Virus record (IMG/VR): IMGVR_UViG_3300042691_042003
Span: 62,001-126,000 of that record
Direction: 5' to 3' (one strand)
Length of the DNA stretch: 64,000 nt
Shown here piece by piece: positions 11,653-63,117 of this stretch. The position numbers and the translations under genes were made by a program. The stretch's first letter is position 1. Each line of letters begins with the position of its first letter. A model generated the notes under the pieces. It searched no databases, had not been told where the DNA came from, and saw only the letters and a program-made list of their open reading frames with translations.

Positions 11653-12441
11653 ATGGGACTTATTAAATCGTACGATGAATTTATTAATGAGAATTTGTAT
11701 GGACAATATTCATATTATGGTGCAGGTTCTCTTTATCCAATCGTTAGTAAATTAGCAACTGAAGGAAAAAATCCTCAACAAATTTATCTTTATCTTACTA
11801 CTTTAGGTATTGATGAAGAAAGAAAAAGAAAAGTTATTACTCAAGTTTTTTTAAATGAATCTATAGATTTCGATTCTATTCAAGAAAAGGGAGGACTTTA
11901 TGAGGATGATGTAGAAGATATTCTTAAGGCAGATACAAAAGATCTTGAAAAGGGTATTGAACCTTCAAAAGCTAAATCTGAAAAAGATGAAGAAATAAAG
12001 AAAATTTTAGATACTTCTAAGTCTGATGAAGATGATGAAGAGAAAGAAGAAGAGAATGTAGAAAAGGATAAAGAAGACGTTTCTACGAAAGTTTCTGCTA
12101 TACAATCAGTTCTTAAAGATGCTCAAAAATTAGAAAAAATTAAGAAAATCCTTTCTGAATCTATGGGATTCGATATAGATGGAGTTGATGATGAAGTTTT
12201 AATGAATATTTTTAATTATCATAAAGTTATTGAAGCTCTTACTCCAGCAGAAAAAGATAAATTAAAACCTTCTGATTTTATATTTCCTGATAAAAGATCT
12301 TGGCCAATCCATGATGAAAAGCATGCTAAAACTGCTTTAGTTTGGGCTACTTGGCCTCAATATAAAAATATAAAAAATGAGGTAGTTTCTGCAGTTATTA
12401 AAAGATATCCACAACTAAAAGGAATAGGAGCTTCTAAATAA
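11653..12441 (+). CDS. Putative head internal protein with capsid-targeting-like leader and C-terminal DUF6582-like domain
   Basis: MGLIKSYDEFINE leader; LTPAEKDKLKPSDFIFPDKRSWPIHDEKHAKTAL domain after VIE/A. Confidence 0.6.
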   Translation: MGLIKSYDEFINENLYGQYSYYGAGSLYPIVSKLATEGKNPQQIYLYLTTLGIDEERKRKVITQVFLNESIDFDSIQEKGGLYEDDVEDILKADTKDLEKGIEPSKAKSEKDEEIKKILDTSKSDEDDEEKEEENVEKDKEDVSTKVSAIQSVLKDAQKLEKIKKILSESMGFDIDGVDDEVLMNIFNYHKVIEALTPAEKDKLKPSDFIFPDKRSWPIHDEKHAKTALVWATWPQYKNIKNEVVSAVIKRYPQLKGIGASK

Positions 12442-12469
12442 AAAGATTATAATAAAAAAATCCATAAAA

Positions 12470-14029
12470 ATGTCTAAACTTAAAACAAGTTACAGTACAA
12501 TCTCTTTAAGAGATAATCTTTCTAATCTATACAAAGATTTAGATAAAAACACTTTGTACTCTTCTATTTTATCACTTCGCCTTAATACAGTTTTAGAAAT
12601 GCAAAAAAATGAAATACATTCTTCTATTTTTTCTGATTCTGACGAAGATAAAGGATTTATTTCTCGTCTTTCTATTGTAGAAAATTTGATTAAAGATTTG
12701 AAGATGTATAATTTTGTTCCTTCTATTAAGAAATTTATAGAAGAAAATGAACAAATCTTAGAAGAAAATAAATTAGAAATAGCTGTAGAGAAAACTTTGC
12801 ATTCTCTTAAAAATGATAAAAATACAAAATTCTACGAAAAAGCTATAATTGATCTAAAGGAATCTTTTGAAACAGAAAATCCTTTATTTTCTATCGTAGA
12901 AAATATGAAACAGCACGTTTGGATTCCTTCTATTAAAAATCTTTATGAATTTGCTAAATTTCAAAAAGGATCTATTACTGAAGTAAACCCTAATTTTAGA
13001 GTAACTAAAATTTATTCTCCAGTAGAACCTATAAATGAAAATTCATTTAATTTTTATTCTTCAGGAAAGGTTCTTAATTATAATGACGGTGAAATTACTG
13101 AATCAGAATCTAAAACTTCGGAAGATTTTAATTTCTTAGTTTCTATTGTTGAATCTGCTAAAATTACAGATAATAATATTAGATTCCTATTTAATAATTC
13201 AATTCTTGATATTAAATTAGGAGAGGATAAAAAAGCCTTAGTAAATCATAAAATTGTTGAATCTAAAAATTTAAGAGATTATCTTCTTTCAACTGCTTTA
13301 GTTCCTTATTCAGAAAAAAATAAAGTAGCTATTTTCGAAAGAGCTCTCGAAAAAGGATCAGATATTAAAGAAATCGATCTTGGATATAAAGTTACTTCTA
13401 ATATATATGAAGGTCTTTCTTGTTCTATATTTAATTCAAATAACAGAATTTTTATTCAGAAAGTAAATAAAGGAATGAAAGAAAATTCTATAGTTGAAGC
13501 TGAATCTCCTTCTGATGCAGTTAATATTGTTAAGAATTTTATGAATTTTGATATTTCTGAATCTATTAAGGATTTAATTGTAACAGAATCTATTGAAATT
13601 GCTAAAAGAAAAGAAGAAACTGAAAAAATTAAAAATCGAATTGCTTTCTTAATGGAAAAGCTTGCTGAAGTAGAATCAGTTGAATCAGAAATTGGGAAGA
13701 ATCCTAGAATTTTAGAAGCTAAAAAACTTCTTGAAGATCAAATAATTGCTCAAAATAAAAAATTAAGTGTAATTGAAGGTGTAGAAATTCCTTTCACTCC
13801 TTCTATGGGAGGTCCTAAAGTAGGAACCGCTAAGATTGCAACAAAAAATGATTTAAAAGCTGGCAAAGAATACACATTAAATGGAAAAGGAGGATATATT
13901 TTCCAGGGTGTTGCCGATGATATTTATATTTTTAATCATAAAGATGAAACCGATCCTTCACCTATTCATATGAATAATGTAGAGGTAGAAAATTCTATCT
14001 CAAAAGGAGAAATCACTGAATGTTATTAA
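12470..14029 (+). CDS. Putative virion/prohead protein
   Basis: 519 aa in late operon; many (I/V)xE-S/G sites; C-terminal module shared with 16620..17015. Confidence 0.55.
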   Translation: MSKLKTSYSTISLRDNLSNLYKDLDKNTLYSSILSLRLNTVLEMQKNEIHSSIFSDSDEDKGFISRLSIVENLIKDLKMYNFVPSIKKFIEENEQILEENKLEIAVEKTLHSLKNDKNTKFYEKAIIDLKESFETENPLFSIVENMKQHVWIPSIKNLYEFAKFQKGSITEVNPNFRVTKIYSPVEPINENSFNFYSSGKVLNYNDGEITESESKTSEDFNFLVSIVESAKITDNNIRFLFNNSILDIKLGEDKKALVNHKIVESKNLRDYLLSTALVPYSEKNKVAIFERALEKGSDIKEIDLGYKVTSNIYEGLSCSIFNSNNRIFIQKVNKGMKENSIVEAESPSDAVNIVKNFMNFDISESIKDLIVTESIEIAKRKEETEKIKNRIAFLMEKLAEVESVESEIGKNPRILEAKKLLEDQIIAQNKKLSVIEGVEIPFTPSMGGPKVGTAKIATKNDLKAGKEYTLNGKGGYIFQGVADDIYIFNHKDETDPSPIHMNNVEVENSISKGEITECY

Positions 14030-14030
14030 A

Positions 14031-14387
14031 ATGTACGTAAAACCTAAAGAATTCTATGAGGAAATTTGTATTTCCCTAGAACAAAAAAAGTTAACCAAAA
14101 AGGCACAGGATATGCTTATCCTTATTGCCTATAGAGCTAATACTAAGCTGACTTATGAAAACCCTATGGATAGGGAAGATTGTATTTCTTTTGCCCTTTT
14201 GGACCTTTTTAAATATTGGGATCGATTTAAACCTGAAAAAACAAAAAATGCGTTTGCTTTTTTTACACAAGTAGCAAAGAATGGTTATGCTAAAGGTTGG
14301 AATAAATTAAGACCTGGAAAATACAAAGGAACCATTTCTCTTAGTGGAAAAAGCAATGCAGATTCCGATGGAATATATTCTGTATAA
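14031..14387 (+). CDS. Late-transcription sigma factor (gp55-like)
   Basis: YVKPKEFYEEI start; REDCISFALLDLFKYWDRFKPEKTKNAFAFFTQVAKN matches the gp55 region-2 pattern. Confidence 0.8.
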   Translation: MYVKPKEFYEEICISLEQKKLTKKAQDMLILIAYRANTKLTYENPMDREDCISFALLDLFKYWDRFKPEKTKNAFAFFTQVAKNGYAKGWNKLRPGKYKGTISLSGKSNADSDGIYSV

Positions 14388-14839
14388 TGAAGAATCTTCT
14401 TACATACGATCAATTTAATGAACAATACCTTCCTTATTTTGGAGTAAAACAAGCCTTAGATGATTCTAAGAATTTCATTACGAATGAGGAAAAAATGTCT
14501 GATTTTCATAGAATTTATACTATGAGTCCTACTTGGTGGATTGCTTGGAAAAGAGAAAATGGAGAAGATTATGGAATTAAACAAGATGCATTTTCTAAAA
14601 CTTATTCGGTTTCTAAAGGAGGAAAAGTTTCTTTTATTTTTGATTATGGTAGAAATAAAGTTTTTACTAATGAATCTCCTGAAATTTTAAAGTTAAAAAA
14701 AGATTTATCTCAAAAAGAATTCGATAAAATAAAAGATAAAGCCGAAGGGGTTGGAAAACCCAAAGAAGATAAAGGAGAAAAGAAAGAAAAAAAGAAAGAA
14801 AAAGGAGCAGATGACATCATGTCATCATTAGGAATATAA
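14387..14839 (+). CDS. Putative head internal protein (leader MKNLLTYDQFNE)
   Basis: Shared N-terminal leader; charged C-terminus. Confidence 0.6.
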   Translation: MKNLLTYDQFNEQYLPYFGVKQALDDSKNFITNEEKMSDFHRIYTMSPTWWIAWKRENGEDYGIKQDAFSKTYSVSKGGKVSFIFDYGRNKVFTNESPEILKLKKDLSQKEFDKIKDKAEGVGKPKEDKGEKKEKKKEKGADDIMSSLGI

Positions 14840-14860
14840 AAAAAAATAAAAAAATAAAAA

Positions 14861-15778
14861 ATGAAAAATATTTTAACATTTGAAAACTTTATTAATGAAT
14901 CTTCGGATTTTAATGGCTTCGATAAAGACGACAATGATTTAATTTATGAATTAAATTACATGTATAATTTATTTGGATCCGGAAGGGATAACAGAAAAAC
15001 CAGGACATATGAATCTAATTTATTGTCTATTTATGAGTACTTTATGGAAAGTAACGAAGAATTTAGTCAATCTATCCTTGATAATTTACTTTTTGAAGCA
15101 GATGAAGAGAAAGAATTAAAAAAAGATATGCAAGCTAGAGATGAATTGGAAATGGGAGATAAATCACTTCCTATGAAAGTAGCTAGACTTATAACATGGA
15201 TTCCCCCTTTTACTCCAGTTAGAATAGGTTATGAACTTCTTAAAATTGTTGATAAAAAAGAAAAGATTAAGAAGCTTTTGAAAAATGTTCCTGAAGGTCC
15301 AAAAAAAGAAAAATTAAGAGCAGAATTAAATAATCTAAAACATAGTCAAGTTAATGCAGTTGCTCAATTAAAGAAAGCTAGAGTAACTAAAGAAGTAGGA
15401 ATTAGATATTCAAAACCTGATCAAGTTGTTCGTCAAGAAGTTAAACAAGTAAAGGATTCTTACAATTATGAAAACGACGAGGATATTCTAGAAAATATTT
15501 ATTTTGAAGGTCTTTCTAAGATTGTTAATATACTTGAAGCAAAAGGAAAAATTAGTGCTGAACAGAAAGAGAAAATTATGAAGCAAGCTGAATCTAAAGG
15601 TAAGGCCGAAGGAAAATCTTTAGCTTCAAAAGCTCAAAGTATTGCAAAGAAAATTTCTCAAAACCCTGATAAAAAGGCTGAAGCTTTAGACTCTTTAAAA
15701 CAAAAAGCAGAATCTGAAAAGGAAGCTTGGAAGAAATTAAAGCAAAAAGCAGAAGAAAAAGGAATTACTTTAGGATAA
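14861..15778 (+). CDS. Putative head internal protein (leader MKNILTFENFINE)
   Basis: Shared leader; internal LFE/A and ILE/A sites; Lys-rich helical segments. Confidence 0.6.
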   Translation: MKNILTFENFINESSDFNGFDKDDNDLIYELNYMYNLFGSGRDNRKTRTYESNLLSIYEYFMESNEEFSQSILDNLLFEADEEKELKKDMQARDELEMGDKSLPMKVARLITWIPPFTPVRIGYELLKIVDKKEKIKKLLKNVPEGPKKEKLRAELNNLKHSQVNAVAQLKKARVTKEVGIRYSKPDQVVRQEVKQVKDSYNYENDEDILENIYFEGLSKIVNILEAKGKISAEQKEKIMKQAESKGKAEGKSLASKAQSIAKKISQNPDKKAEALDSLKQKAESEKEAWKKLKQKAEEKGITLG

Positions 15779-16593
15779 TGAAGAATTTGAAAACATACGA
15801 AGAATTTTTAAATGAATCGATTCCTTCTTACTCTTTTGATGGAAATCAAATTGAAGTGGGATCTTCGGTTCAGTCTTTGGATGGATTTTCAGGCATTATA
15901 ATTTCAAAAGAAATTTCTAACGGTAAAGTTTCTTTTAGAGATAATAAAGGAATTATTCACATCTGTGAATCAAAAGATCTTATTATCGATGATTTAAATG
16001 AGGGATTAAAATGGTGGGATATAGCTAAAGGTATTGTTGCTTCAGATGCTATTAAAACCGGACCTAATTTTAAGAACGGAAGTATTCTTTCTACTTTAAT
16101 TTCTTTAGCATGGAGAGATAAAATTACAAATAAAATTGAATCTATAAGAAATAAGCCAGGTTATGATGAAATGAAAGATGTTGCTTTTACTCTAGCTGAT
16201 AAATTAAGTAACGATCCTAGAATGTATGGGTTAGTTAACAAATTAGCTAGTCATCCTAGAATAACTACAATTTTTACTCCTTCTCAAAAAGAAAAAATAA
16301 AAGCTGCTAAAGTTAATTTAGAAAGACAACAAATTATTAAAGATATTTCTAGTTATATCAATGATTCTTTAACTCCTGAAGAAAAGAAATTTTTTGATGA
16401 TATAAATAATTTAATTAAAATAAAAAACCCAGAATCCGAAGAAATAGAAGAAGATGTTACAACCGATCCTAACAGAACAGTCGGAACCGGAACATACACA
16501 ACTACACATTCGGATCCAAATGTTTTAACTAAAGGATATTCTAATACTACCGATTCTGGATCTAATGGAAGCTATCCGGTTTATATAGGCTAA
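15778..16593 (+). CDS. Putative head internal protein (leader MKNLKTYEEFLNE)
   Basis: ATG at 15778 (TAATG overlap) preferred over TTG 15727; second LNE/G site inside. Confidence 0.65.
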   Translation: MKNLKTYEEFLNESIPSYSFDGNQIEVGSSVQSLDGFSGIIISKEISNGKVSFRDNKGIIHICESKDLIIDDLNEGLKWWDIAKGIVASDAIKTGPNFKNGSILSTLISLAWRDKITNKIESIRNKPGYDEMKDVAFTLADKLSNDPRMYGLVNKLASHPRITTIFTPSQKEKIKAAKVNLERQQIIKDISSYINDSLTPEEKKFFDDINNLIKIKNPESEEIEEDVTTDPNRTVGTGTYTTTHSDPNVLTKGYSNTTDSGSNGSYPVYIG

Positions 16594-16619
16594 GATAAAT
16601 ATAAAAAAATAAATTTTAA

Positions 16620-17015
16620 ATGAAAAATTTACTCTCTTTTGAAGAATACATTAATGAAAATTACATCCAAGAAGCCACAGATGCTGATGGGTTTGATCCT
16701 GCTAAAGGAAATGTAACAGATCCTGAAAAAGGTGATATTAAAGCAACTACTGGGAAAAATAATGACCCTGGATTTACTTCGGATCAAGCTCCTGATAAAA
16801 TTGCAAGTCCTGTTTCTACTATTTCTGATATGAAACCAGGTAAAGAATATGTTCTTACCGTAGATGGTAAAAAACATACTGATATGCTTTATCAAGGTGT
16901 TACTGATGGAGTTCATATTTTTAACGGAGAAGATAAGGCTCATGATATCACTTTTACCGATTCTGATTTATCCTCTGTTATCTCTAAAGGTGGTGTAGTA
17001 GAAGTTGCCGAATAA
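16620..17015 (+). CDS. Putative head internal protein (leader MKNLLSFEEYINE)
   Basis: Shared leader; preceded by GATAAATA; C-terminal module shared with 12470..14029. Confidence 0.65.
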   Translation: MKNLLSFEEYINENYIQEATDADGFDPAKGNVTDPEKGDIKATTGKNNDPGFTSDQAPDKIASPVSTISDMKPGKEYVLTVDGKKHTDMLYQGVTDGVHIFNGEDKAHDITFTDSDLSSVISKGGVVEVAE

Positions 17016-17033
17016 TTTCTACTTATATTACTT

Positions 17034-17513
17034 ATGCATTCAATAAAGAATAATAAACCTTCTAAGAAATCAGGATTTCAACAAGGTTATTTTCCTATAA
17101 ACGAATGTAAGAAATATCAAGGTAAAGGTCCTATAATTTATAGATCTTCTTGGGAGAAAAAATTTTGTTTATATTGTGAAAGGAATCCGGCGATCGTATC
17201 TTGGTCGTCGGAATCTTTCGTTATAAGGTATTTTAATCCTCTTGATAATAAATATCATAATTATTTCCCTGATTACGTTTTAAAATTAGAAAGCGGAGAA
17301 ATTTTTATAGTTGAAGTAAAACCTAAAGCTCAATTAATAAAACCGGATCCTCCAAAGAAAAAAACTCCTAAGGCTTTAAAGTCTTATAAATGGCTTTATG
17401 AAACTTGGGTTACAAATATGTGTAAAAAGGCTGCTGCCGAAGAATTTGCTAAAGAAAGAGGATGGAAGTTTCTTCTCGTAACTGAAGATTTTTTTAAAGT
17501 TAGATCAGAATAA
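17034..17513 (+). CDS. Head completion protein (gp4-like, TnsA-type nuclease fold)
   Basis: KYQG, YRSSWE, WSSE, YFPD, VEVKP, K..AA..F...GW.F...TE. Confidence 0.9.
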   Translation: MHSIKNNKPSKKSGFQQGYFPINECKKYQGKGPIIYRSSWEKKFCLYCERNPAIVSWSSESFVIRYFNPLDNKYHNYFPDYVLKLESGEIFIVEVKPKAQLIKPDPPKKKTPKALKSYKWLYETWVTNMCKKAAAEEFAKERGWKFLLVTEDFFKVRSE

Positions 17514-19956: not shown

Positions 19957-21801
19957 ATGAGCAATTATTTACTTGTACTAGAAAGATCTGAAGGTAATCT
20001 TGCAGTTTCGAAAGAAGGCGATAAGTATGTCCTAGAAGGAATTTTTACTGAAATCGGAGTAAAGAATAAAAATAATAGAATTTACGACGAAAAAGAATTA
20101 CTTCCACATATTGAAGAGCTACAAACAAAATTAAAAGGAAATAAACTTCTTGGAGAACTAGATCATCCTAAATCTTTTGATATTTCTCTTAGAAATGCAT
20201 CACATGTAATAGAAGATATTAGCTATGATAAAGGGTCTAAGAAAGTTACTGGTAGAATTCGTTTACTTAATACGGATGCCGGTAAACAAGCTATGGCTCT
20301 TGTTGACGCTGGAGTTCCTCTTCATATTTCTAGTAGAGCTGCTGGTGTTGTTGAAGGTAATGGTCATGTAAAAATTAAGAAAATGTTTACTTATGATTTA
20401 GTTGCAGATCCTGGATTTGCTAACGCTGAATTAAAAAGAGTAAACGAATCTTTTGGATTTTCTGATGACGATTTAATTCAAATATTTGAAATTCCTAGCA
20501 CAATAGACGAATCATTTGTTGATGATAAATATACAAAACAAACAAAAAAAGAAGAAATGGATTCTAATCAATACATCAAGGTTGAGGATTTCAATGAATA
20601 TACCAAGCATTTAAAAGAAGAAATCGACGGATTGAAAAAATCTTTAACCGAATCTAAAAATTCAAACGATTCTGAAATCAATGAAGGTTTAGTTCGTTAT
20701 GCTGAAGAAACAGCAAAGAGAGTAAATCAAATCCAAGAATATGTTGGAAAACTTGCCGAATCGGTTGATGGTCTTATTTCACATAACGATTATATCGTTG
20801 AAAATCTAGAAAAAGTTAAAGATTATGCTGAAATGGTTGGAGAAAGATCTAATCAAGGTATTAATTATGCTGAGAAGCTTGCTGAATCGGTAGATCATCT
20901 TATCGAATATACCAAGATAATTGCTGAGAAAGCTGATCAAGGTATCGAATACACTAAGCATATTGCTGAAATGACAGATAATAATATCGAATACACAAAG
21001 CACGTTGCTTTAAAAGCTGATCAAGGTATCGAATACACTAAGTATATCGCTAATGAAAATTCTAATCGTTGGAATTATCAAACCTATATGAATGAGCAAC
21101 TTGATAATGTAATTTCTCATAACGATTATATCGTTGAAGGAACTTCTTCTATTATTGAATATACTGAATATCTCAAAGAACAAACCGAAAATCTTGCTAA
21201 TTACATGAACCATGTGGTTGAAAAGATTAATGAAGGATTTGTTCCTAATTCTTTTGAACCTAAAGATGATTTTGAAAAAGAAATTTCTGAAAAAATCGGA
21301 TCTATTTTAGAATCAGTTAAAGAAGAGGTTTCTTTTGAAAAGAAAGATAATAATTTGAATTTCTTAAATTTCCTTTCTGAAAGTAAAAGAAATCAATTCC
21401 ATTCTCTTAACGATGATATGAAAGAAAGAGTTATTTCTACATTTGAATCTAATAAATATTATGGTTCTGCTGATGCAGAAAAGCTTTTCGAATCTATCTT
21501 TATTATTCAAGCCCCTGTAATGAATTGGCTATCTAATATGCCTTCTAAATACAGAGAAGCATGGAACGGACTTAATGAATCTCAGAAAAATGCAATCAAA
21601 GCTCAAGCTTCTGTTAGAAATCTTGATACTCAATACAAAATTGACGATTTCTGGTCTACAAGAGATTTAAGAACTGTTAAAGTTGAAACTCCTCTTACTG
21701 AATCTAATGAAACAGTAATTGAAGAATCCCCTAAATATGTAACTCCTTCTACATATATGCAAACAGTTGAAGACGAATTAAGAAGGAGATTTAAAAGATA
21801 A
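19957..21801 (+). CDS. Prohead protease (gp21) fused to a scaffold/core domain
   Basis: LEGIF, NKNNRIY, GELDHP, ISSRAAG, YDLVADPGF in the first ~160 aa; then ~450 aa acidic coiled coil. Confidence 0.9.
   Translation: MSNYLLVLERSEGNLAVSKEGDKYVLEGIFTEIGVKNKNNRIYDEKELLPHIEELQTKLKGNKLLGELDHPKSFDISLRNASHVIEDISYDKGSKKVTGRIRLLNTDAGKQAMALVDAGVPLHISSRAAGVVEGNGHVKIKKMFTYDLVADPGFANAELKRVNESFGFSDDDLIQIFEIPSTIDESFVDDKYTKQTKKEEMDSNQYIKVEDFNEYTKHLKEEIDGLKKSLTESKNSNDSEINEGLVRYAEETAKRVNQIQEYVGKLAESVDGLISHNDYIVENLEKVKDYAEMVGERSNQGINYAEKLAESVDHLIEYTKIIAEKADQGIEYTKHIAEMTDNNIEYTKHVALKADQGIEYTKYIANENSNRWNYQTYMNEQLDNVISHNDYIVEGTSSIIEYTEYLKEQTENLANYMNHVVEKINEGFVPNSFEPKDDFEKEISEKIGSILESVKEEVSFEKKDNNLNFLNFLSESKRNQFHSLNDDMKERVISTFESNKYYGSADAEKLFESIFIIQAPVMNWLSNMPSKYREAWNGLNESQKNAIKAQASVRNLDTQYKIDDFWSTRDLRTVKVETPLTESNETVIEESPKYVTPSTYMQTVEDELRRRFKR
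20860..21060 (+). repeat. 42-bp (14-aa) period degenerate repeat in the scaffold domain
   Basis: ADQGIEYTKHIAEM / TDNNIEYTKHVALK / ADQGIEYTKYIANE; AGCTGATCAAGGTATCGAATACACTAAG at 20931 and 21015. Confidence 0.85.
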
Positions 21802-21894: not shown

Positions 21895-23529
21895 ATGTAT
21901 TTAATTAACGAACAAGAAGTTTTCGGTAAATGGGCTCCAATTATCGAATCAACTACCGGCATTCAGGATCGTTCTAAAGTTGAATGGATGTCTAAGTACT
22001 GTCATTATCATGAATTGTACGAAAATAATAACCTCGCTCAACTTGGTGCTGTAAATGGCATGGGAGCTACTCGTTTCCCTGGAGATCCAGGAACTCAAAG
22101 TCAGTTCTTCTCTCAAGAAACTGGTTCTGGTGATAAGGCTCACACTCTTCTTCCTCTTGCTATGCAAGTTGCAGCTCAGACTGTAGGTCTTGATCTAGTT
22201 CCTGTTGTACCTATGCCTGGTCCTATGGGTGTTCTTACCTATCTTGACTTCGTATATGGTGGTGGTAAAACTAATGGTACTGGTGCTAACATTCCTCTCC
22301 TTGTAAAAGTTGATGTAGGATCTACTGCTGCTCCTGGTGCTGCTGGAACTACTGGAGGTATTACTTATACTTATGTAGGACCTTCTCGTATTGACGGTAA
22401 TGCTATATTCCATATTACTGGTTCTCTTACTACTGGTACTATTCTTTCTAATATGTATGCTTCTGCTGGTTCTACTAACCTTAACAATGTTAAATATACT
22501 GGAGCTGTTACTAAGGTTGAATTAGTTAAAGCTCTCGAAGATCATATTACTGGTTTCTCTGGAGATTCTCTTCGTGCTGGAATTTATGCAGATACTGCTA
22601 ATAATGGTGTTAATGATCCTCTTTCTCGTTTTGATGGTGAAGGAACTCAAGATAACATCATGAACTTAAGCCTTTTCAACAAATCTGTTGAAGCTAAAAC
22701 TTTCCAAGTTGCTGCTGCTGTTACTCGTGAGCAAGTTCAGGATCTTAAGCAATTTGGAGTTGATGCTGTTTCTCAGGTTGAATCTGTTCTTATTAACGAA
22801 CTTACTCAATCTATCAACAAGAACATTCTTTCTAGAATCTTCGCTCTTGGTGAAAGAAACCACTCTCAAGTTATTTCTACTCAAGGTCTTAACTTCTTCT
22901 TGAACCTTGGTTCTATTCCTAGATTAGTATCTTATGCTTCTGTTACTAACGCTCCTTATACTGCTTTTGCTTCTTATCTTAGCAGCAATTACAGTAATTT
23001 AACAGGTGCTACAATGAACGCAACTGAAAATTCTTCTTCACCTGCTGAAAACCTTTCTACTCGTCAGCGTAAGATCATGTCTAAGATCCTTGCAATTGCT
23101 AACCTAATTGCTATCCGTGGTCGTCGTGGTCCTGCTACTTTCGTAGTAACTAACGGTCAAGTATGTTCTGCTCTTCAGGATGTAGCTGGTTTCGTACCTG
23201 CTCCTATGGCTAACACCATCAATCAGATGAGCGGTTCTCTTTACCCAATCGGTACCCTTGCTGGTCTTGCTATCTACAACGATCCTAACATGGCTTGGAA
23301 CGATACTCGTTTCTGTGTAGGTCGTAAAGGTGATGGTAATTCTCCAGGACTCGTATTTATGCCTTACTTGATGGCTGAATCTGTTCAGACTATCGCTGAA
23401 GGTACTATGGCTCCTAAGGTTGCTGTTAAGTCTCGTTATGCTCTCGTTGAAGCTGGTTTCCACCCACAAACCATGTATTTAACTTCCGGAGTTCATATCG
23501 ATTCTCTTATCGCTGGAGGTTTAGTATAA
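21895..23529 (+). CDS. Major capsid protein (gp23)
   Basis: KWAPIIE, VVPMPGP.G, EQVQDLK, LINE....IN, RRG...FVV, FMPY, P...VKSRYAL. Confidence 0.95.
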   Translation: MYLINEQEVFGKWAPIIESTTGIQDRSKVEWMSKYCHYHELYENNNLAQLGAVNGMGATRFPGDPGTQSQFFSQETGSGDKAHTLLPLAMQVAAQTVGLDLVPVVPMPGPMGVLTYLDFVYGGGKTNGTGANIPLLVKVDVGSTAAPGAAGTTGGITYTYVGPSRIDGNAIFHITGSLTTGTILSNMYASAGSTNLNNVKYTGAVTKVELVKALEDHITGFSGDSLRAGIYADTANNGVNDPLSRFDGEGTQDNIMNLSLFNKSVEAKTFQVAAAVTREQVQDLKQFGVDAVSQVESVLINELTQSINKNILSRIFALGERNHSQVISTQGLNFFLNLGSIPRLVSYASVTNAPYTAFASYLSSNYSNLTGATMNATENSSSPAENLSTRQRKIMSKILAIANLIAIRGRRGPATFVVTNGQVCSALQDVAGFVPAPMANTINQMSGSLYPIGTLAGLAIYNDPNMAWNDTRFCVGRKGDGNSPGLVFMPYLMAESVQTIAEGTMAPKVAVKSRYALVEAGFHPQTMYLTSGVHIDSLIAGGLV

Positions 23530-25285: not shown

Positions 25286-25766
25286 AATTCGTAGACAAAA
25301 TGCAGGCAAAACACCTACAAAATACGGAATAGTTACAAAAGGTCTAAAACCTAGATATAAAAAAGTTCTTAATGAAAATCCGGTTATTAAGAAATATTCG
25401 GATGATGATAGGTTCATACAGGCCATCTTCAGGATTGAAGATGAGAAGATAAGATTATCCCATTTACAAAGGCCGTTTGTTCACCCTGTGTCAAAAGAGA
25501 TATACACGTTTGAATGTATTAAAGACTCTTATAAAATATTTAATTGGGAATGTGCTTATTGTAAAATTCCAATACAATCGAGAATAGATAGATTTAGTCC
25601 TGATAATTTTACATGTGAAAAATGCTATAAGTACTATATTAAAGATTCTAAAAAAATAAATCAAAGAATTATTGAGTCTTCACTTTCTTTTACCGAAAAA
25701 TGTAAGAGGATGATGATAGATAATCAGAAATCATTCTTAAAATATCTAAAGAAAAATGAAAAATAG
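25278..25766 (+). CDS. Hypothetical zinc-finger protein
   Basis: CAYC...CEKC; basic. Confidence 0.6.
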   Translation: MVEIRRQNAGKTPTKYGIVTKGLKPRYKKVLNENPVIKKYSDDDRFIQAIFRIEDEKIRLSHLQRPFVHPVSKEIYTFECIKDSYKIFNWECAYCKIPIQSRIDRFSPDNFTCEKCYKYYIKDSKKINQRIIESSLSFTEKCKRMMIDNQKSFLKYLKKNEK

Positions 25767-27231
25767 GTTCGATTATTTTGATCAATTTGTTTTAAATGAA
25801 GCTAAGAAAAATAAAACCCCTAAGATTAAGGTTCTTATGCTCTCAAATATTAGTGAAGAATCTTATACTGTTCCTGCAGTTGAAGCCGAATGTAAAAAGA
25901 GGGGGATAGTTTTCCGTATTATCGATATTAACACTTGCTCTTTAATTAAAGATAAGAAAGGAGACGGTTATATTATAAATGATAAAACTAAGGTTCCTTT
26001 TAAAATAGATTCTGAAGACACAGCTATACTTACTAGAAGAGGAGTCGTTAGAAGTACTATGACGAGAGATCTTATTTCTCAATTAGAGGATGCCAATTTC
26101 TTTGTTGTTAATACTCTTGAATCTATTCTTGCTTGTGAGAATAAATTTGTCACTTCAAAAATTCTTATGAATGCTGGAATTCCAGTTCCTAAAATGGCAA
26201 TTGTTGATGGTGAAGAATCTATCGATTCAGCTCTAAAAGAAATAGGTGGTCAATTTCCTATAGTTCTTAAAATGCTTTCAGGATCTCATGGTATTGGAGT
26301 TTCTATTATTGAATCTCTCGCTTCTCTTAAATCGGTTTTACAAACTATGTGGAAAATCGATCCAAATATCGAAACTCTTATTCAAGAAAAAATTGATTCT
26401 GATTACGATCTAAGAATCCACGTTCTTACTAAAAGATTTAATTCTCCTTCTCCGGATGAAACCGATTCAGTTCTCCTTGGTTATATGAGACGTAATAGAG
26501 TTAAAAAAGATTTCAGAACTAATTATTCTCTTGGAGGAACGGTTGAAAAAACTAAGGTTACTCCTGAACAAGAAAAAATTGCGATTGAGGCTGCTAAAGC
26601 TGTAGGTTGTAATTGGTGCGGTGTTGATCTGATCGTTGATAAGAAAACGAAGAAAAATTATGTTCTTGAAGTTAATTCTTCTCCAGGAACACAAGGTTTG
26701 AAAAAAGCTACAGGAGTCGACGTAGTAAAAGATATAGTTGATTTTCTTTCGGATAAAAAGAATTGGATTAGATCTCGTAGAGTTATAGGTTTTAGAGAGG
26801 TAATAACAATTCCAGAAATAGGTGATGTTATTGCTAAATTTGATACTGGTAACGGAGCTATGTCTTGCTCATTAACTTACGATACTGCAGAATTAATTGA
26901 TGGAGATAAATTTATCGAATGGGAATTAGGAGGTAAAAAATTCAAAAGTAAAGTAGTAGGATTTTCTACTGCTGAAGTCGGTCCTAAAACACACGAAAGG
27001 CCTACTATTCTTATGGACATATCTTTTGCAGGTAAAACTTATAAAGATGTTGAAGTTTCTCTAGTAGACCGTAAAGAAAAATCTACTAAATTCTTAGTAA
27101 ATAGAAAATTCATGGAAAGAATAGGATGTTCTGTTTCTCCTTATAAAACATTTATGATTACTTCTTTTGATGGAGAATATTCAGCAAGAGATGCAAAAGG
27201 AGATCCACATGCAGGAATAAAATTTATATAA
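25756..27231 (+). CDS. rimK: RimK-family ATP-grasp ligase fused to a C-terminal retropepsin-like (RimB-type) protease, with capsid-targeting-like leader
   Basis: GIPVPK, FPIVLK, GSHGIGV, IQEKI, DLRIHV, FRTNYSLGG, GVDL, LEVNSSPG; then IGFRE...AKFDTGNG...RP....LVDR...LVNR. Confidence 0.88.
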   Translation: MKNRFDYFDQFVLNEAKKNKTPKIKVLMLSNISEESYTVPAVEAECKKRGIVFRIIDINTCSLIKDKKGDGYIINDKTKVPFKIDSEDTAILTRRGVVRSTMTRDLISQLEDANFFVVNTLESILACENKFVTSKILMNAGIPVPKMAIVDGEESIDSALKEIGGQFPIVLKMLSGSHGIGVSIIESLASLKSVLQTMWKIDPNIETLIQEKIDSDYDLRIHVLTKRFNSPSPDETDSVLLGYMRRNRVKKDFRTNYSLGGTVEKTKVTPEQEKIAIEAAKAVGCNWCGVDLIVDKKTKKNYVLEVNSSPGTQGLKKATGVDVVKDIVDFLSDKKNWIRSRRVIGFREVITIPEIGDVIAKFDTGNGAMSCSLTYDTAELIDGDKFIEWELGGKKFKSKVVGFSTAEVGPKTHERPTILMDISFAGKTYKDVEVSLVDRKEKSTKFLVNRKFMERIGCSVSPYKTFMITSFDGEYSARDAKGDPHAGIKFI

Positions 27232-27233: not shown

Positions 27234-27485
27234 ATGAAAAAGCTAAAAAATATTCAATCAATTGAAGAATATTTAGGAGAAGCAGCAGGTTCTCCTAATA
27301 CAGAAAATTATATGTTTTTTGAAAATCTAAAAACTATAAAACAAAGTATAGAAGAACTTATGACCCTTGATCCTATTATGGTAGATCAAATTCTTCAAGA
27401 TGGTCATGATTGGGCAGAAGATCATATTGCAACTGCTAAGGAATCAATCGATCAGGTTACTCACTTTTTTATGAACAAAAAATAA
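27234..27485 (+). CDS. Small helical protein with leader-like N-terminus (IQSIEEYLGE)
   Basis: 83 aa; GHDWAEDHIATAKE. Confidence 0.65.
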   Translation: MKKLKNIQSIEEYLGEAAGSPNTENYMFFENLKTIKQSIEELMTLDPIMVDQILQDGHDWAEDHIATAKESIDQVTHFFMNKK

Positions 27486-29943: not shown

Positions 29944-29952
29944 GTTATCGAA

Positions 29953-29960: not shown

Positions 29961-29976
29961 ATAAAAAAGTTTTCGC

Positions 29977-30231
29977 ATGAAAAATTTCCCTTCTTATGAA
30001 GAATTCTTAAATGAAGGAAATTGGTCTCAAATGATGAAAGGTGTAAGAACTGGTTCGGTCCCTTACACTATTGTTGCTATCGATAGAGTAGCTAAAAAAG
30101 TCGTAGGCCAAGAAATCGTTAGTATTCGTGATGCAGTTCCTGCTTATTACGAAGATATGAAACGTAGATTCTCTAAGTTTCATTTACATATTGAAGATTC
30201 TACTGGAAAGGTAGTTTGGTCAGAAAAATAA
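29977..30231 (+). CDS. Leader-tagged putative internal protein 1 (MKNFPSYEEFLNE)
   Basis: Shared leader. Confidence 0.7.
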   Translation: MKNFPSYEEFLNEGNWSQMMKGVRTGSVPYTIVAIDRVAKKVVGQEIVSIRDAVPAYYEDMKRRFSKFHLHIEDSTGKVVWSEK

Positions 30232-30239
30232 AATCAGAA

Positions 30240-30617
30240 ATGAACACACATATTAAATCATTTAATGAATTCCTTAATGAAAGTGTAAATGATCCTGTTC
30301 TCGTTGCTTTACGTGCTGCTAAAGAAGATCGTAAAAAGATGATGATGGATAAGAAAGAAAGAATGAAAAGGCGAGTTTACGGTGCAAAACGTGAACAAAT
30401 GGAAGCTGAGCTAGATAAAATCTGGCAAGAAATTAAGGATAATAAGCAGCAACAATCTGATCTTTGGAGAGAAATGGAAGCCGAGGCCGGTGATAAGAGC
30501 CCAAACTTTTCAGATGCAGATGGCAACCGTTATGGTCAAAAATTCAACGATCTTGATGATGAATTAGAAAAGCTTTATCGTCGTCGTTCTGAATTAGAAA
30601 CAAAATTAGCATATTAA
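30240..30617 (+). CDS. Leader-tagged putative internal protein 2 (MNTHIKSFNEFLNE), coiled coil
   Basis: ATG 30240 preferred over TTG 30216; shared leader. Confidence 0.7.
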   Translation: MNTHIKSFNEFLNESVNDPVLVALRAAKEDRKKMMMDKKERMKRRVYGAKREQMEAELDKIWQEIKDNKQQQSDLWREMEAEAGDKSPNFSDADGNRYGQKFNDLDDELEKLYRRRSELETKLAY

Positions 30618-30618
30618 G

Positions 30619-30870
30619 ATGAATCATATTCCTTCATTTGAAGAATTTTTAAACGAAAGTTCTCATTATAAAATTGACGATTTCCAAGTTGGAGATGTTA
30701 TTCACTTTAAAGATGGTGAAGCTTGGAAAGTTGTTAAAGTTAATAATATAAGAGATTTAATCTCAGTATTTCCTCATAATAAGTTAGCAAAAGATAAAAA
30801 CGTTAGCATAACGATAGAATTAAGACTTAAATATCTTAATGATAACGTAACAAAAATTGAAAAGTCTTAA
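30619..30870 (+). CDS. Leader-tagged putative internal protein 3 (MNHIPSFEEFLNE), SH3-like body
   Basis: Shared leader; FQVGDVIHF..G..WKVV. Confidence 0.7.
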   Translation: MNHIPSFEEFLNESSHYKIDDFQVGDVIHFKDGEAWKVVKVNNIRDLISVFPHNKLAKDKNVSITIELRLKYLNDNVTKIEKS

Positions 30871-30871
30871 T

Positions 30872-31699
30872 ATGAAAAATATCCCTTCTTTTGAAGAATT
30901 CGTAAACGAAAGTTTGAACGAATCTCTTAGCTTAACTCTTAGGGATGTTCCTAAAATCGTTAAGGATTTCGTTTCGAGGACTAAATATATCAAAAATCTT
31001 AAAGAAAAAGATTGGTTAACTGCATCGGAAATTATCATAGTAACTGATAAAGATTTTGATATAAAAGGTAAATCAACAACTGGCAATTATATGTTGCTAG
31101 GACTTTATAAAACTTATGGACCTGTTTATAAAGTTGAATGGGCATCCGTAAGACCTGATATGAAATATCCTGCTAATGCTGGAATCTATAATAAAGAGAT
31201 TGATAAAGCCACATGGGAAAAACTAAAAAATGCCCATGAAAGAAAAATGATCGATCCAAAAAGTCTTACGGCTAATGATATTAAAAACACAGGAGATCTT
31301 TTAGGTAAATTCATAACCGATGAAATTAATACATCTTCGGTTCCTGTTAAAGGTCAATTTGATCCAACAAATTCAGGATCAATTAAAATGGAAATTGAAA
31401 GTGCTTATAAAGATTCAGAAGTTAGTATCGTTAGAGGAGATAATGTAAGAGTAGATTTCTACTTTAAACGTGCTGGTGATGGCCGTAATGTTGCTAAAAC
31501 TAATCTATTCTTTATCATAGATCCTTCTCAACAATCGGTAGAATTTAAAAATCCTGATGTTAGTGGTCTTAGTAGAGCAAACTACAGAAATATGAGAGAT
31601 ATTTCAGCATTCTTTAAGAGTTCTATTCAAGCTTGGAAGGATGAAGATAAGAGAAGATCAGATGCTATGCAACAAACAGCATTTAGTCAAGATAGATAA
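30872..31699 (+). CDS. Leader-tagged putative internal protein 4 (MKNIPSFEEFVNESLNE)
   Basis: ATG 30872 preferred over TTG 30857; shared leader. Confidence 0.7.
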   Translation: MKNIPSFEEFVNESLNESLSLTLRDVPKIVKDFVSRTKYIKNLKEKDWLTASEIIIVTDKDFDIKGKSTTGNYMLLGLYKTYGPVYKVEWASVRPDMKYPANAGIYNKEIDKATWEKLKNAHERKMIDPKSLTANDIKNTGDLLGKFITDEINTSSVPVKGQFDPTNSGSIKMEIESAYKDSEVSIVRGDNVRVDFYFKRAGDGRNVAKTNLFFIIDPSQQSVEFKNPDVSGLSRANYRNMRDISAFFKSSIQAWKDEDKRRSDAMQQTAFSQDR

Positions 31700-31714
31700 A
31701 AAAATAAAACAATA

Positions 31715-32014
31715 ATGAATAATCATATTCCATCATTTGATGAATTTTTAAATGAAAGTTCTCTTCAAGGAACTCCTAAATTTCTTCCAGGTAAAGCTGC
31801 TATTGCTTATGGTGATGAAGAAGGTAAAATCGTAGCTGCTGAATTTGCTAAAGATTGGAAGAAACTTAAGAAATACGACGAAACCGGTTGGTTAGATCCT
31901 ACTGAAATGAAAAACATGGGAATCGAACCTACAGATATTCTCGTAGCCTTCAAAGATTCTGAAGGAGGAATTAATGTATACACTTACGGTGAAGGAGGTG
32001 TAGAGCTAAAATAA
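31715..32014 (+). CDS. Leader-tagged putative internal protein 5 (MNNHIPSFDEFLNE)
   Basis: Shared leader. Confidence 0.7.
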   Translation: MNNHIPSFDEFLNESSLQGTPKFLPGKAAIAYGDEEGKIVAAEFAKDWKKLKKYDETGWLDPTEMKNMGIEPTDILVAFKDSEGGINVYTYGEGGVELK

Positions 32015-32025
32015 AAAATTAAAAA

Positions 32026-32583
32026 GTGAAACATATACAATCGTTCGACGAATTCATTAATGAATCAGAAGATCAGAATCTTCCTCTTAATGAAAATAAT
32101 TTAGTTTATATTAAAGATAAGAAATTTAAATCTTCACAAGATATTATGAATTTCTTTCAGAAAAATGCAGGTTCCGCTTTTGAAAAATTTATTTCTGATA
32201 AAATGGGAGTGAAAGCTAAAGCTGTAACTGGAGTTTCCAGAAGAGGTGATGCTGTTAATATTTCTACACAACCAATTTCTAAAAAAGATTTAGGAATTTT
32301 TGGATTTGTTTTTAGTGAAGTATCTATCGATTCTTTTGGTGGAGGTATAATTGAACATCAAATGGTAAATAATATGCAATTTGAATTTTGTCCTGCTATC
32401 TTCTTTAGATTACATGTTAGTTATAAACATATAGGAGGTGGTTCTAACGGTGCCGATATTGTACTTCCTAGTAATGATCCTTACAATACTCTTATTATGT
32501 ACGATATCGTAGAAAATCGTTTTCTAGATCAGGCCGAAGCTAAAGCTTCTAAAACTAAATATTGGGTCGAAGGATCTTGGTAA
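32026..32583 (+). CDS. Leader-tagged putative internal protein 6 (MKHIQSFDEFINE)
   Basis: GTG start; shared leader; second LNE/N site. Confidence 0.7.
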   Translation: MKHIQSFDEFINESEDQNLPLNENNLVYIKDKKFKSSQDIMNFFQKNAGSAFEKFISDKMGVKAKAVTGVSRRGDAVNISTQPISKKDLGIFGFVFSEVSIDSFGGGIIEHQMVNNMQFEFCPAIFFRLHVSYKHIGGGSNGADIVLPSNDPYNTLIMYDIVENRFLDQAEAKASKTKYWVEGSW

Positions 32584-32599
32584 AAATAAAATTTAAATA

Positions 32600-33427: not shown

Positions 33428-33429
33428 TT

Positions 33430-33669
33430 ATGAAGAATATTCCCTCTTTCGAAGAATTCTTAAATGAAGCTGCAAGAGTCGATACATTTCCTTACAAAGC
33501 TTCACATTCTAAAGATCCTAAAGGTTTTGGACTTTGGTATTTTAGTTTCAGTAAAGATGGTTCCGATTCCTTTTCCCCTGAAAAATCTATGAGTTACGGA
33601 GATGCTTTGAAATGGGCACAAGCTCAAGCAAAAGAAAAGAAACAATCTGTTATTTATGTAATGGGATAA
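33430..33669 (+). CDS. Leader-tagged putative internal protein 8 (MKNIPSFEEFLNE)
   Basis: Shared leader. Confidence 0.7.
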   Translation: MKNIPSFEEFLNEAARVDTFPYKASHSKDPKGFGLWYFSFSKDGSDSFSPEKSMSYGDALKWAQAQAKEKKQSVIYVMG

Positions 33670-62820: not shown

Positions 62821-63117
62821 ATGAAAAATACAAAACTTCCTTCTTTCAAAGAATTTAATAAGACTTTTGAAGATGTAAAAGTTGAAGAAGCTATGGGTGT
62901 TGCTTCTAAAAAGCTACAAAAGGCAACTGAAGAATTCCATAGTGCTCAATTAGAACTTCAAAAGCTACAAAAACAATTTGTAGGTCTTGCTAAAGATGAT
63001 TCAAAAAGAGAAAGCATGAAACAAAGCATCCTTAATCAGCATAAAATAGTAAAACAAAAGGAAGCAATATTTGCTAAAGCTCTCGGTGATGAAGATATTG
63101 AAGACCTTGAAATCTAA
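62821..63117 (+). CDS. Coiled-coil protein with leader-like N-terminus (MKNTKLPSFKEF)
   Basis: Late-type AATATATAA upstream; VEE/A site. Confidence 0.62.
   Translation: MKNTKLPSFKEFNKTFEDVKVEEAMGVASKKLQKATEEFHSAQLELQKLQKQFVGLAKDDSKRESMKQSILNQHKIVKQKEAIFAKALGDEDIEDLEI

What the first reader, a model, noticed from the sequence alone, without database searches (positions are those of the whole stretch)
11653..17015. Second cluster of leader-tagged proteins surrounding the gp55 gene
Seen: 11653 (GLIKSYDEFINE), 14387 (KNLLTYDQFNE), 14861 (KNILTFENFINE), 15778 (KNLKTYEEFLNE) and 16620 (KNLLSFEEYINE) carry the same leader; weaker versions occur at 24188, 27234 and 62821. With the array and RimK this gives roughly 15-17 tagged genes in 64 kb, versus a handful in T4. 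Inference: the tag is a genome-wide packaging code, and this cluster inside the head module may be the conserved core set while 29977-33669 is the variable set.
Basis: partly seen in the sequence, partly recalled or inferred. Interest (0 to 1): 0.68.

Follow-up and report, generated by a model that had tools for sequence, protein, structure and literature searches.

The report
T4-style capsid-targeting leader, massively expanded
About thirty unrelated proteins of this 246-kb T4-like phage start with the same 13-residue tag, which closely resembles the tag T4 uses to load proteins into its head and then cut off, so the phage probably ships a large, fast-changing set of proteins into its host together with its DNA.

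Summary
The five genes at 11653, 14387, 14861, 15778 and 16620 all start with M-K-N-[LI]-x-[ST]-[FY]-[DE]-E-[FY]-[LIV]-N-E. A strict form of the motif occurs 13 times in the six-frame translation of the window, each time 5-6 residues after a start codon on the + strand, against 0 in 100 shuffles.

The whole genome (246,081 bp, about 326 ORFs) has 22 strict and about 12 weaker copies.

The best explanation is a T4-type capsid-targeting sequence with a prohead-protease cleavage site:
- Its most conserved positions line up with T4 IPII/IPIII residues 4, 7, 8 and 10.
- A Peptidase_S77 (gp21-type) protease fused to the scaffold lies 3 kb downstream. It carries conserved [LIV]-N-E sites, one of them invariant at the domain junction.
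- The mature proteins are unrelated to each other.
- Synonymous codons vary freely, so selection acts on the peptide.

The "conserved core" idea is only partly right. The gp55-gp4 slot is empty in the more distant relatives and holds 1-7 mostly tagged genes in closer ones. Only 11653 is broadly conserved, and 14861 is unique.

No proteomic evidence exists, and the complex prediction gave no answer. This is a new variant of a known kind.

The parts
11653..12441 (+). Tagged gene, 262 aa. The leader is residues 1-13 (11653-11691). A second conserved FLNE site ends at residue 69. The protein is acidic and mostly helical. It is the only widely conserved member of the cluster.
   Evidence: (30/35 relatives). 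142 metagenomic homologues, all hypothetical.
12470..14029 (+). Untagged conserved gene, 519 aa, function unknown. Its C-terminal ~65 aa are homologous to the C-terminal domain of 16620-17015.
   Evidence: 35/35 relatives; BLASTP E 2e-8. No Pfam or PHROG family.
14031..14387 (+). gp55-like late sigma factor. It forms the left border of the variable slot.
   Evidence: phrog_234 E 5e-11 and Sigma70_r2. Present in 35/35 relatives.
14387..14839 (+). Tagged gene, 150 aa. The leader is residues 1-12 (14387-14422), a variant without the [LIV] residue (..YDQFNE). The start overlaps the gp55 stop by one base.
   Evidence: 19/35 relatives. No family.
14861..15778 (+). Tagged gene, 305 aa. The leader is residues 1-13 (14861-14899). 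No orthologue in any relative sampled.
   Evidence: 0/35. No family.
15778..16593 (+). Tagged gene, 271 aa from the ATG at 15778. The leader is residues 1-13 (15778-15816). Of all the leaders, this one is the closest to T4 IPII/IPIII (KTYEEFLNE against KTYQEFIAE).
   Evidence: 18/35 relatives.
16620..17015 (+). Tagged gene, 131 aa. It consists of a leader helix, a disordered linker and a C-terminal SH3/Tudor-like beta-barrel (residues 60-131).
   Evidence: helix 7-14; pLDDT about 90 for residues 60-131; best Z 6.6, a generic fold. 18/35 relatives.
17034..17513 (+). gp4-like head completion protein. It forms the right border of the variable slot.
   Evidence: phrog_218 E 2e-42. Present in 35/35 relatives.
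19957..21801 (+). Prohead protease (residues ~1-164, Peptidase_S77) fused to a scaffold. VNE ending at residue 164 is invariant and sits at the domain junction. Further conserved sites of this type end at residues 380 (MNE in the window, [LIV]NE in most relatives), 426, 541 and 582 (LTE in the window). This is the proposed enzyme that removes the leader, and the proposed docking partner.
   Evidence: PF03420, E 3.6e-12; phrog_207, E 1e-39; T4 gp21 structure 5JBL, E 3.9e-6.
21895..23529 (+). gp23-type major capsid protein. Its N-terminus, M-Y-L-I-N-E, carries the same site. The site is conserved in 29/29 relatives.
   Evidence: (PF07068, E 8e-36).
25756..27231 (+). RimK-like ATP-grasp enzyme with a leader one residue longer. 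The leader is kept across the whole clade.
   Evidence: (PF08443, E 3e-35).
27234..27485 (+). Small gene, 83 aa, with a degenerate leader (..SIEEYLGE). Its orthologues have canonical leaders.
29977..33669 (+). Array of eight consecutive tagged genes between the clamp loader and the RNase H/FEN gene. It belongs to the same tag system.
   Evidence: (0/38 orthologues for seven of the eight).
62821..63117 (+). Weak candidate, 98 aa, with the N-terminus MKNTKLPSFKEF.. and no [LIV]xE directly after it.
   Evidence: 7.3 bits. Not checked in relatives.

Best explanation
The shared N-terminus is a capsid-targeting and processing propeptide of the T4 kind.

**Proposed mechanism.**
- The 12-13 residues form a short amphipathic helix. 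Its two aromatic residues dock the protein onto the prohead core, most likely the scaffold part of the 614-aa protease-scaffold protein.
- After shell assembly, the gp21-type protease cuts behind the terminal [LIV]-x-E. Here that site is almost always [LIV]-N-E.
- Cutting releases the mature protein inside the head, from where it would be ejected into the host with the DNA.

**How the cargo set evolves.** The tag is modular. It has been placed on about 30-35 unrelated proteins in this genome, mostly small orphans but also enzymes. Tagged genes accumulate in a few plastic slots, one of which lies between gp55 and gp4 and holds four of the five genes flagged here.

**What is shown and what is inferred.**
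- Shown: the motif, its strict N-terminal position, its modularity, peptide-level selection, the protease family, conserved matching sites in the scaffold and the major capsid protein, and the turnover of the slot.
- Inferred: binding to the core, cleavage, presence in virions and ejection.
For: 1. **Position and enrichment.** 13/13 strict hits in the window and 22/22 in the genome are N-terminal, against 0 in 100 shuffles.
2. **Conservation profile.** In 169 distinct tagged N-termini from this genome and 122 related loci, the profile is M-K-N-[LI]-x-[ST]-[FY]-[ED]-[EQ]-F-[VLI]-N-E. Conservation stops right after the E.
3. **Match to T4.** T4 IPII and IPIII start MKTYQEFIAE. According to the review PMC9026906, residues 4 and 7 carry targeting, residues 8 and 10 carry processing, and gp21 cuts after L/I-x-E. 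These four positions align with the aromatic, F, [VLI] and E of the leader. A DNA pattern derived from this leader finds ipII and ipIII at their N-termini in T4.
4. **T4-type head genes.** Peptidase_S77, phrog_207 and PDB 5JBL (gp21) match residues ~25-134 of 19957-21801. Portal_T4 and Gp23 also match.
5. **Distribution of [LIV]NE sites.** Conserved sites are found in the protease-scaffold (five, one invariant at the domain junction), at the major capsid protein N-terminus and in 11653. None is found in the portal, gp2, gp15-like, gp55 or 12470.
6. **Variants keep the cleavage rule.** In relatives the leader ends in FLFE, FLLE, FLVE, FLAE, FVSE or FLGE, so [LIV]-x-E holds.
7. **Tandem sites.** A second [LIV]NE lies within 12 residues after the leader in 32 of 164 N-termini, against 4.3 expected. 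Redundant sites are known from processed propeptides of giant phages.
8. **Unrelated cargo.** Only one similar pair exists among 34 mature parts. The cargo includes ATP-grasp, GT2, cytidylyltransferase-like, KTSC and DUF5856 folds.
9. **Peptide-level selection.** Synonymous codons vary freely, for example TTT 10 / TTC 10 and AAT 15 / AAC 6.
10. **Structure models.** AlphaFold2 puts a helix at residues 7-14 (16620) and 7-12 (11653), followed by a low-confidence stretch, which in 16620 is a long disordered linker.
Against: - There are no proteomic, expression or structural data for this phage or any close relative. All 142 homologues of 11653 are metagenomic hypothetical proteins.
- The complex prediction of the leader with the protease-scaffold gave no answer.
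- The match to T4 is only about 9 residues long and cannot prove common descent.
- The mature proteins are not uniformly small and basic like the T4 internal proteins. Their pI ranges from 4.3 to 10.2 and their length from 55 to 476 aa.
- Packaging metabolic-looking enzymes (GT2, cytidylyltransferase-like) is unusual.
- Tenacibaculum phages PTm1 and pT24, the nearest cultured relatives by major capsid protein, lack the motif. No cultured system is therefore at hand.
Confidence: 0.7

Rival explanations
1. The tag is only a protease substrate site (a removable propeptide, for instance one that keeps the proteins inactive until late). It has no role in addressing proteins to the head.
For: The last three residues match the conserved sites in the scaffold. 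Tandem second sites follow many leaders.
Against: A cleavage site needs only [LIV]-x-E, yet ten residues upstream of it are conserved too. These include the two aromatic positions that carry targeting in T4. The gp21-type protease is active inside proheads, so a substrate has to get there first.
Confidence: 0.1
2. The tag addresses proteins to some other late structure or place (tail, baseplate, a replication or assembly compartment, or export) rather than to the capsid interior.
For: Some cargo are enzymes (GT2, cytidylyltransferase-like, ATP-grasp) that are not obvious head contents. There are no virion data.
Against: The leader is acidic and not hydrophobic, so it is not a secretion signal. 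The same site is conserved at the major capsid protein N-terminus and in the scaffold, which are head components. The closest precedent, in T4, is capsid targeting.
Confidence: 0.08
3. The conserved element acts at the nucleic-acid level, for example as a translation-initiation or regulatory signal in the first 40 bases of the mRNA, or as a recombination site for cassette exchange.
For: All copies sit at the very start of genes. ATG-AAA-AAT starts are A-rich. Tagged genes pile up in plastic slots.
Against: Synonymous codons vary freely while the amino acids are fixed. Leucine is spelled TTA, CTT or TTG, and the position also accepts I and V. Upstream regions share no motif. The T4 late-promoter word is not enriched in the window.
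Confidence: 0.05
4. The tagged genes are one fast-diverging paralogous family, and the N-terminus is simply the part that has not yet diverged.
For: Eight of the genes are tandem neighbours (29977-33669).
Against: The mature parts show no similarity, with 1 similar pair among 34. Lengths range from 55 to 476 aa, and several belong to different, unrelated Pfam families.
Confidence: 0.03
5. The tag is a RiPP-type leader peptide recognised by the RimK-like ATP-grasp ligase, as in graspetides, and the tagged genes are precursor peptides.
For: An ATP-grasp gene lies at 25756-27231, 2.7 kb upstream of the eight-gene array. Many precursors sharing one leader is a RiPP hallmark.
Against: The cargo is up to 476 aa long and includes folded enzymes. 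The ATP-grasp enzyme carries the leader itself. Tagged genes are spread over the whole 246 kb. The leader is only 13 residues long and ends in the protease site found in the scaffold.
Confidence: 0.03

Closest known systems
Capsid-targeting sequence (CTS) of the phage T4 internal proteins IPI, IPII and IPIII (Mullaney and Black 1996, as reviewed in PMC9026906 and PMC3012670)
   Same: - It lies directly at the N-terminus and is 10-19 residues long.
- It has an aromatic residue, two residues, F, an aliphatic residue, one residue, then E.
- It ends in the L/I-x-E site of a gp21-family protease.
- It is the only part shared by otherwise unrelated proteins.
- The cargo genes lie in polymorphic loci.
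- The phage has T4-type portal, protease and major capsid protein.
   Different: - The leader is three residues longer after M-K.
- Asn is nearly fixed at the position before the E, where T4 has Ala.
- About 30-35 tagged genes per genome (about 10% of ORFs), against a handful in T4.
- The cargo is not uniformly small and basic, and it includes enzymes.
- The protease and scaffold are one polypeptide.
- Nothing has been tested experimentally here.
Long N-terminal propeptides of head and ejection proteins in phiKZ-like giant phages (phiKZ gp175, SPN3US gp245; PMC5694885)
   Same: - Many head proteins are processed behind Glu by a distant gp21 relative.
- Propeptides carry redundant cleavage sites.
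- Paralogues share identical N-termini.
   Different: - Those propeptides are mostly 80-160 residues long and end in S/A-x-E.
- They are not one short leader shared by dozens of unrelated proteins.
- Those phages have no gp55 or T4-type gene order.
Variant leader in the 462-kb uncultured phage LR756500 (major capsid protein 55% identical)
   Same: The architecture is the same: M-K-Y-I-x-E-Y-E-E-F-[LIV]-x-E at 12 or more N-termini, with the same spacing from the start codon.
   Different: It has a different consensus in the first half, the position before E is often L or F, and the record is unannotated.

Membership tests
T4-type capsid-targeting sequence / internal-protein system | Short propeptide located directly at the N-terminus of the precursor | tested here: met
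   All strict hits start 5-6 residues after the start codon. 154 of 202 hits in relatives start exactly at a Met.
T4-type capsid-targeting sequence / internal-protein system | Aromatic residues at the two positions that carry targeting in T4 IPIII (residues 4 and 7) | tested here: met
   After alignment, F/Y occupies the first position (116 F, 53 Y) and F/Y/W the second (150, 10, 9) in 169 N-termini. The alignment was anchored on aromatic-x-x-aromatic, so these counts describe the set rather than test it. The independent strict regex gave the same result. The T4 reference sequence was read, and the roles of the residues come from PMC9026906.
T4-type capsid-targeting sequence / internal-protein system | Propeptide ends in the protease site L/I-x-E | tested here: met
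   V, L or I in 155 of 169 and E in 150 of 169 at the matching positions. Variants in relatives keep [LIV]-x-E.
T4-type capsid-targeting sequence / internal-protein system | A gp21-family (Peptidase S77) prohead protease is encoded by the phage | tested here: met
   PF03420 E 3.6e-12, phrog_207 E 1e-39, PDB 5JBL E 3.9e-6. His70 and Ser125/126 are invariant in 25 relatives.
T4-type capsid-targeting sequence / internal-protein system | The tag is the only part shared by otherwise unrelated cargo proteins | tested here: met
   All-against-all BLASTP of 34 mature parts gave one similar pair. The cargo falls in different Pfam families.
T4-type capsid-targeting sequence / internal-protein system | Cargo proteins are small and basic, like IPI-IPIII | tested here: not met
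   pI 4.3-10.2 and 55-476 residues. All five proteins of the flagged cluster range from acidic to mildly basic. This feature describes the T4 cargo, not the tag itself.
T4-type capsid-targeting sequence / internal-protein system | Tagged proteins are incorporated into proheads, and the tag is removed in the mature virion | not testable with these tools
   There is no cultured relative and no proteome. The complex prediction gave no answer.
T4-type capsid-targeting sequence / internal-protein system | The tag alone suffices to load a foreign protein into the head | not testable with these tools
   This needs a reporter fusion in a cultured phage or a prohead assembly system.
RiPP (graspetide-type) leader peptides | Short precursor peptides whose leader is read by a neighbouring ATP-grasp ligase that itself lacks the leader | tested here: not met
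   The cargo is up to 476 aa and includes folded enzymes. The ATP-grasp enzyme itself carries the leader.

The most novel reading that the evidence does not exclude
A whole clade of uncultured T4-like jumbo and huge phages (about 200 to 460 kb) uses one short plug-in address tag to load around a tenth of its gene products into the capsid and inject them with the DNA. That cargo includes enzymes such as an ATP-grasp ligase and a glycosyltransferase. The cargo genes turn over rapidly in a few dedicated genomic slots. The result would be an exchangeable arsenal of first-strike host-takeover or anti-defence proteins, far larger than the T4 internal-protein set.
Probability: 0.4. Interest if true: 0.75.

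Novelty: new variant of a known kind. Interest (0 to 1): 0.6.

Why it matters
If the tag works as in T4, it gives a sequence-only way to list the probable injected proteome of a large group of uncultured jumbo phages.
- The list would hold dozens of orphan proteins per genome that reach the host before any phage gene is expressed. These are prime candidates for anti-defence and takeover functions.
- It would show that the T4 capsid-targeting principle is old and scalable, running from 3-4 cargo proteins in T4 to about 30 here.
- It would offer a second, divergent targeting peptide for protein packaging in engineered capsids.
- The gp55-gp4 slot, empty in some relatives and holding up to seven tagged genes in others, is a natural experiment in how such cargo is gained and lost.

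Tried and rejected
- **Complex prediction.** The full protease-scaffold (alignment A2) was folded with residues 1-45 of the 16620 family (A1). The result was no answer, ipSAE 0.00 in both runs, and it is not used either way.
- **Fold search for 16620.** Foldseek found nothing at E <= 0.001. VIA-align gave only generic SH3/Tudor/Sm-like barrels, Z <= 6.6, so no function can be assigned.
- **AlphaFold2 model of 11653.** Mean pLDDT was 57, too weak for a fold search.
- **Family scans.** Pfam and PHROGs on the five cluster proteins gave no family, apart from an uncharacterised PHROG on the C-terminus of 11653.
- **Word-indexed protein search with 11653.** It returned 142 relatives, all unnamed metagenomic proteins. 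The exhaustive profile search was not used.
- **T4 late-promoter word TATAAATA.** It is not enriched in the window (11 found, 14 expected), so no claim is made about timing of expression.
- **Cultured relatives.** Megablast of the head module against phage records found nothing. Tenacibaculum phages PTm1 and pT24 have no such leader, either near their head genes or genome-wide. The PTm1 virion paper is not in the library.
- **Paralogy, nucleic-acid signal and RiPP leader.** All three were considered and rejected.
- They were not used.


Full report
**What the window is.** The window is bases 62,001-126,000 of a single-contig virus record of 246,081 bp with 31% G+C. It has a T4-type core:
- a gp46-like SbcC/Rad50-type ATPase (8816-10486)
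- a gp55-like late sigma factor at 14031-14387 (phrog_234)
- gp4-like and gp2-like proteins
- a Portal_T4 portal at 18298-19911 and a Gp23 major capsid protein at 21895-23529
- a 614-aa protein at 19957-21801 whose first ~160 residues are a Peptidase_S77 (gp21) protease and whose remainder is a repetitive helical scaffold.

By major capsid protein, the nearest records are an uncultured 462-kb phage (LR756500, 55%), the Lak phages of Prevotella (40%) and Tenacibaculum phages pT24 and PTm1 (33-37%).

**The observation.** The gene at 15778 starts at the ATG at 15778. The strict pattern [ST][FY][DEN][DENQ][FY].?NE occurs 13 times in the six-frame translation of the window: five times in this cluster and eight times in the array at 29977-33669. 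Every hit is on the + strand, 5-6 residues after a start codon, and none is internal. One hundred shuffles gave no hits.

In the whole genome there are 22 strict copies, all N-terminal. A profile built from them finds about 12 weaker N-terminal copies among about 326 ORFs.
- 27234 is genuine, because its orthologues carry canonical leaders.
- The RimK-like gene 25756 carries a one-residue-longer version that is kept across the clade.
- 62821 is weak and could not be checked.
- 24188 has a different, longer N-terminal stretch that ends in ILNE.

**The tag is a peptide and it is modular.** Synonymous codons vary freely at the conserved positions: Phe TTT 10 / TTC 10, Asn AAT 15 / AAC 6, and Leu spelled three ways. 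Upstream DNA shares no motif. Selection therefore acts on the peptide.

The mature parts of 34 tagged proteins are unrelated to one another, with a single similar pair. They range from 55 to 476 residues and from pI 4.3 to 10.2. They include a RimK-like ATP-grasp enzyme, a family-2 glycosyltransferase, a cytidylyltransferase-like protein, a KTSC domain and DUF5856. The rest are orphans. This excludes simple paralogy.

**Comparison with T4.** T4 IPII and IPIII start MKTYQEFIAE, and IPI starts MKTFKEF and is cut later behind ITE. According to the review PMC9026906:
- the first ten residues of IPIII suffice for loading into the head
- residues 4 and 7 carry targeting and residues 8 and 10 carry processing
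- gp21 cuts behind L/I-x-E.

In 169 distinct tagged N-termini from this genome and its relatives, the profile is M-K-N-[LI]-x-[ST]-[FY]-[ED]-[EQ]-F-[VLI]-N-E, and conservation ends right after the E. The four functionally defined T4 positions coincide with the aromatic, F, [VLI] and E of this leader. The leader at 15778 reads KTYEEFLNE, against KTYQEFIAE in T4. A DNA pattern derived from the leader finds ipII and ipIII at their N-termini when run on T4.

**The end of the leader looks like the protease site.** In an alignment of 25-42 protease-scaffold orthologues, VNE ending at residue 164 is invariant and sits exactly at the protease-scaffold junction. Four further sites of this type are conserved, ending at residues 380, 426, 541 and 582; at 380 and 582 the window itself reads MNE and LTE. 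The major capsid protein starts M-Y-L-I-N-E in all 29 relatives. The 11653 protein has a second conserved FLNE ending at residue 69. The portal, gp2, gp15-like, gp55 and 12470 proteins have no conserved site of this kind.

Leader variants in relatives end in FLFE, FLLE, FLVE, FLAE, FVSE or FLGE, which keeps [LIV]-x-E. A second [LIV]NE follows within 12 residues in 32 of 164 N-termini, against 4.3 expected. This recalls the redundant sites in the propeptides of giant phages. AlphaFold2 models put a short helix at residues 7-14 (16620) and 7-12 (11653), ahead of a low-confidence stretch that in 16620 is a long disordered linker.

**Relatives and the "conserved core" idea.** A portal-anchored scan of IMG/VR gave 80 loci with 58-93% portal identity. 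The leader occurs 202 times in 53 of them, nearly always at a Met. A 294-kb relative has 34 pattern hits on its coding strand against 0-1 for the control. LR756500 has its own variant, M-K-Y-I-x-E-Y-E-E-F-[LIV]-x-E, at 12 or more N-termini. PTm1 and pT24 have none.

Orthologue counts in 35 relatives with enough flank:

| Gene | Relatives with an orthologue |
|---|---|
| 11653 | 30/35 |
| 12470 (untagged) | 35/35 |
| 14387 | 19/35 |
| 15778 | 18/35 |
| 16620 | 18/35 |
| 14861 | 0/35 |

The interval between gp55 and gp4 is 0-9 bp in the relatives with 58-71% portal identity. In closer relatives it is 0.9-3.5 kb and holds one to seven genes of changing identity, nearly all of them tagged. Four of the five flagged genes therefore sit in a plastic cargo slot, not in a conserved core.

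The array at 29977-33669 is more extreme, with 0/38 orthologues for seven of its eight genes. Its slot, between the clamp loader and RNase H/FEN, is a general insertion hot spot of 45 bp to 7.1 kb with mixed content. The tagged proteins kept most widely are 11653 and the RimK-like enzyme.

**Most likely mechanism.** The leader docks the precursor onto the prohead core through its two aromatic residues. The gp21-type protease then removes it behind [LIV]-N-E, and the mature protein stays in the head and is ejected with the DNA. The first two paragraphs of evidence above are shown directly. Docking, cleavage, presence in virions and ejection are inferred from T4. I put this at about 0.7.

The rivals are a cleavage-only propeptide, targeting to another structure, a nucleic-acid signal, paralogy, and a RiPP-type leader for the ATP-grasp enzyme. 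Each conflicts with at least one result above.

**What failed or is missing.**
- The complex prediction gave no answer.
- Fold searches on the 16620 domain gave only a generic SH3/Tudor-like barrel.
- The 11653 model is of low confidence.
- All 142 homologues of 11653 are unnamed metagenomic proteins.
- The literature held in the library describes the T4 tag and the long propeptides of phiKZ-like phages. The papers found or opened show no leader family of this size in a T4-like jumbo phage.

**Verdict.**
- The packaging-tag reading is the best explanation but is untested.
- The core-versus-variable split is only partly right.
- The system is a new variant of a known kind: the T4 capsid-targeting principle with a slightly different tag, used on about a tenth of the genes of a jumbo phage clade.

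Noticed in passing
L149:567-731 (T4 NC_000866 18966-19130, minus strand): T4 gp61.1 is a 54-aa hypothetical protein that starts MKTFKEFIKE followed by D. This is a capsid-targeting-like N-terminus, picked up by the pattern derived from this window. I do not know whether this has been reported.
   Followed up: partly
window 13829-14026 and 16806-17012: The untagged conserved 519-aa protein (12470-14029) and the tagged 131-aa protein (16620-17015) share a ~65-residue C-terminal beta-barrel (BLASTP E 2e-8). The fold is SH3/Tudor-like. Some orthologues of 16620 carry the domain twice.
   Followed up: partly
window 20901-21051: There is a 42-bp (14-residue) tandem repeat, 3.6 copies, inside the scaffold part of the protease-scaffold gene. 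The copy number differs among relatives. This could relate to head size.
   Followed up: no
window 25756-27231: A RimK-like ATP-grasp enzyme keeps a leader in all relatives examined, down to 47% identity, where it reads MKHFENFQLITE followed by A. If packaged, it would be an injected peptide or glutamate ligase.
   Followed up: partly
window 29944-33783: The interval between the clamp loader and the RNase H/FEN gene is a general insertion hot spot. It is 45 bp in many relatives and up to 7.1 kb in others, and only part of its content is tagged.
   Followed up: yes
L131-L148 (LR756500, 462 kb): This huge uncultured phage uses a variant leader, M-K-Y-I-x-E-Y-E-E-F-[LIV]-x-E, at 12 or more N-termini. 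Several lie in a cluster around 313-317 kb.
   Followed up: partly
window 10518-11618: The weakly gp15-like protein (PF16724, E 0.0017, below the Pfam cut-off) has a long Ser/Asn/Gly-rich low-complexity C-terminal half.
   Followed up: no
G000:C1:1-200 and 245882-246081: Both contig ends code for collagen-like G-x-y repeats and repeat each other. The record is probably a circularly closed or permuted assembly that breaks inside a repeat-rich gene.
   Followed up: no
window 14385-14389 and 15776-15780: gp55/14387 and 14861/15778 overlap by one base (TAATG stop-start). The tagged genes are therefore tightly packed behind gp55, which suggests co-transcription and coupled translation.
   Followed up: no
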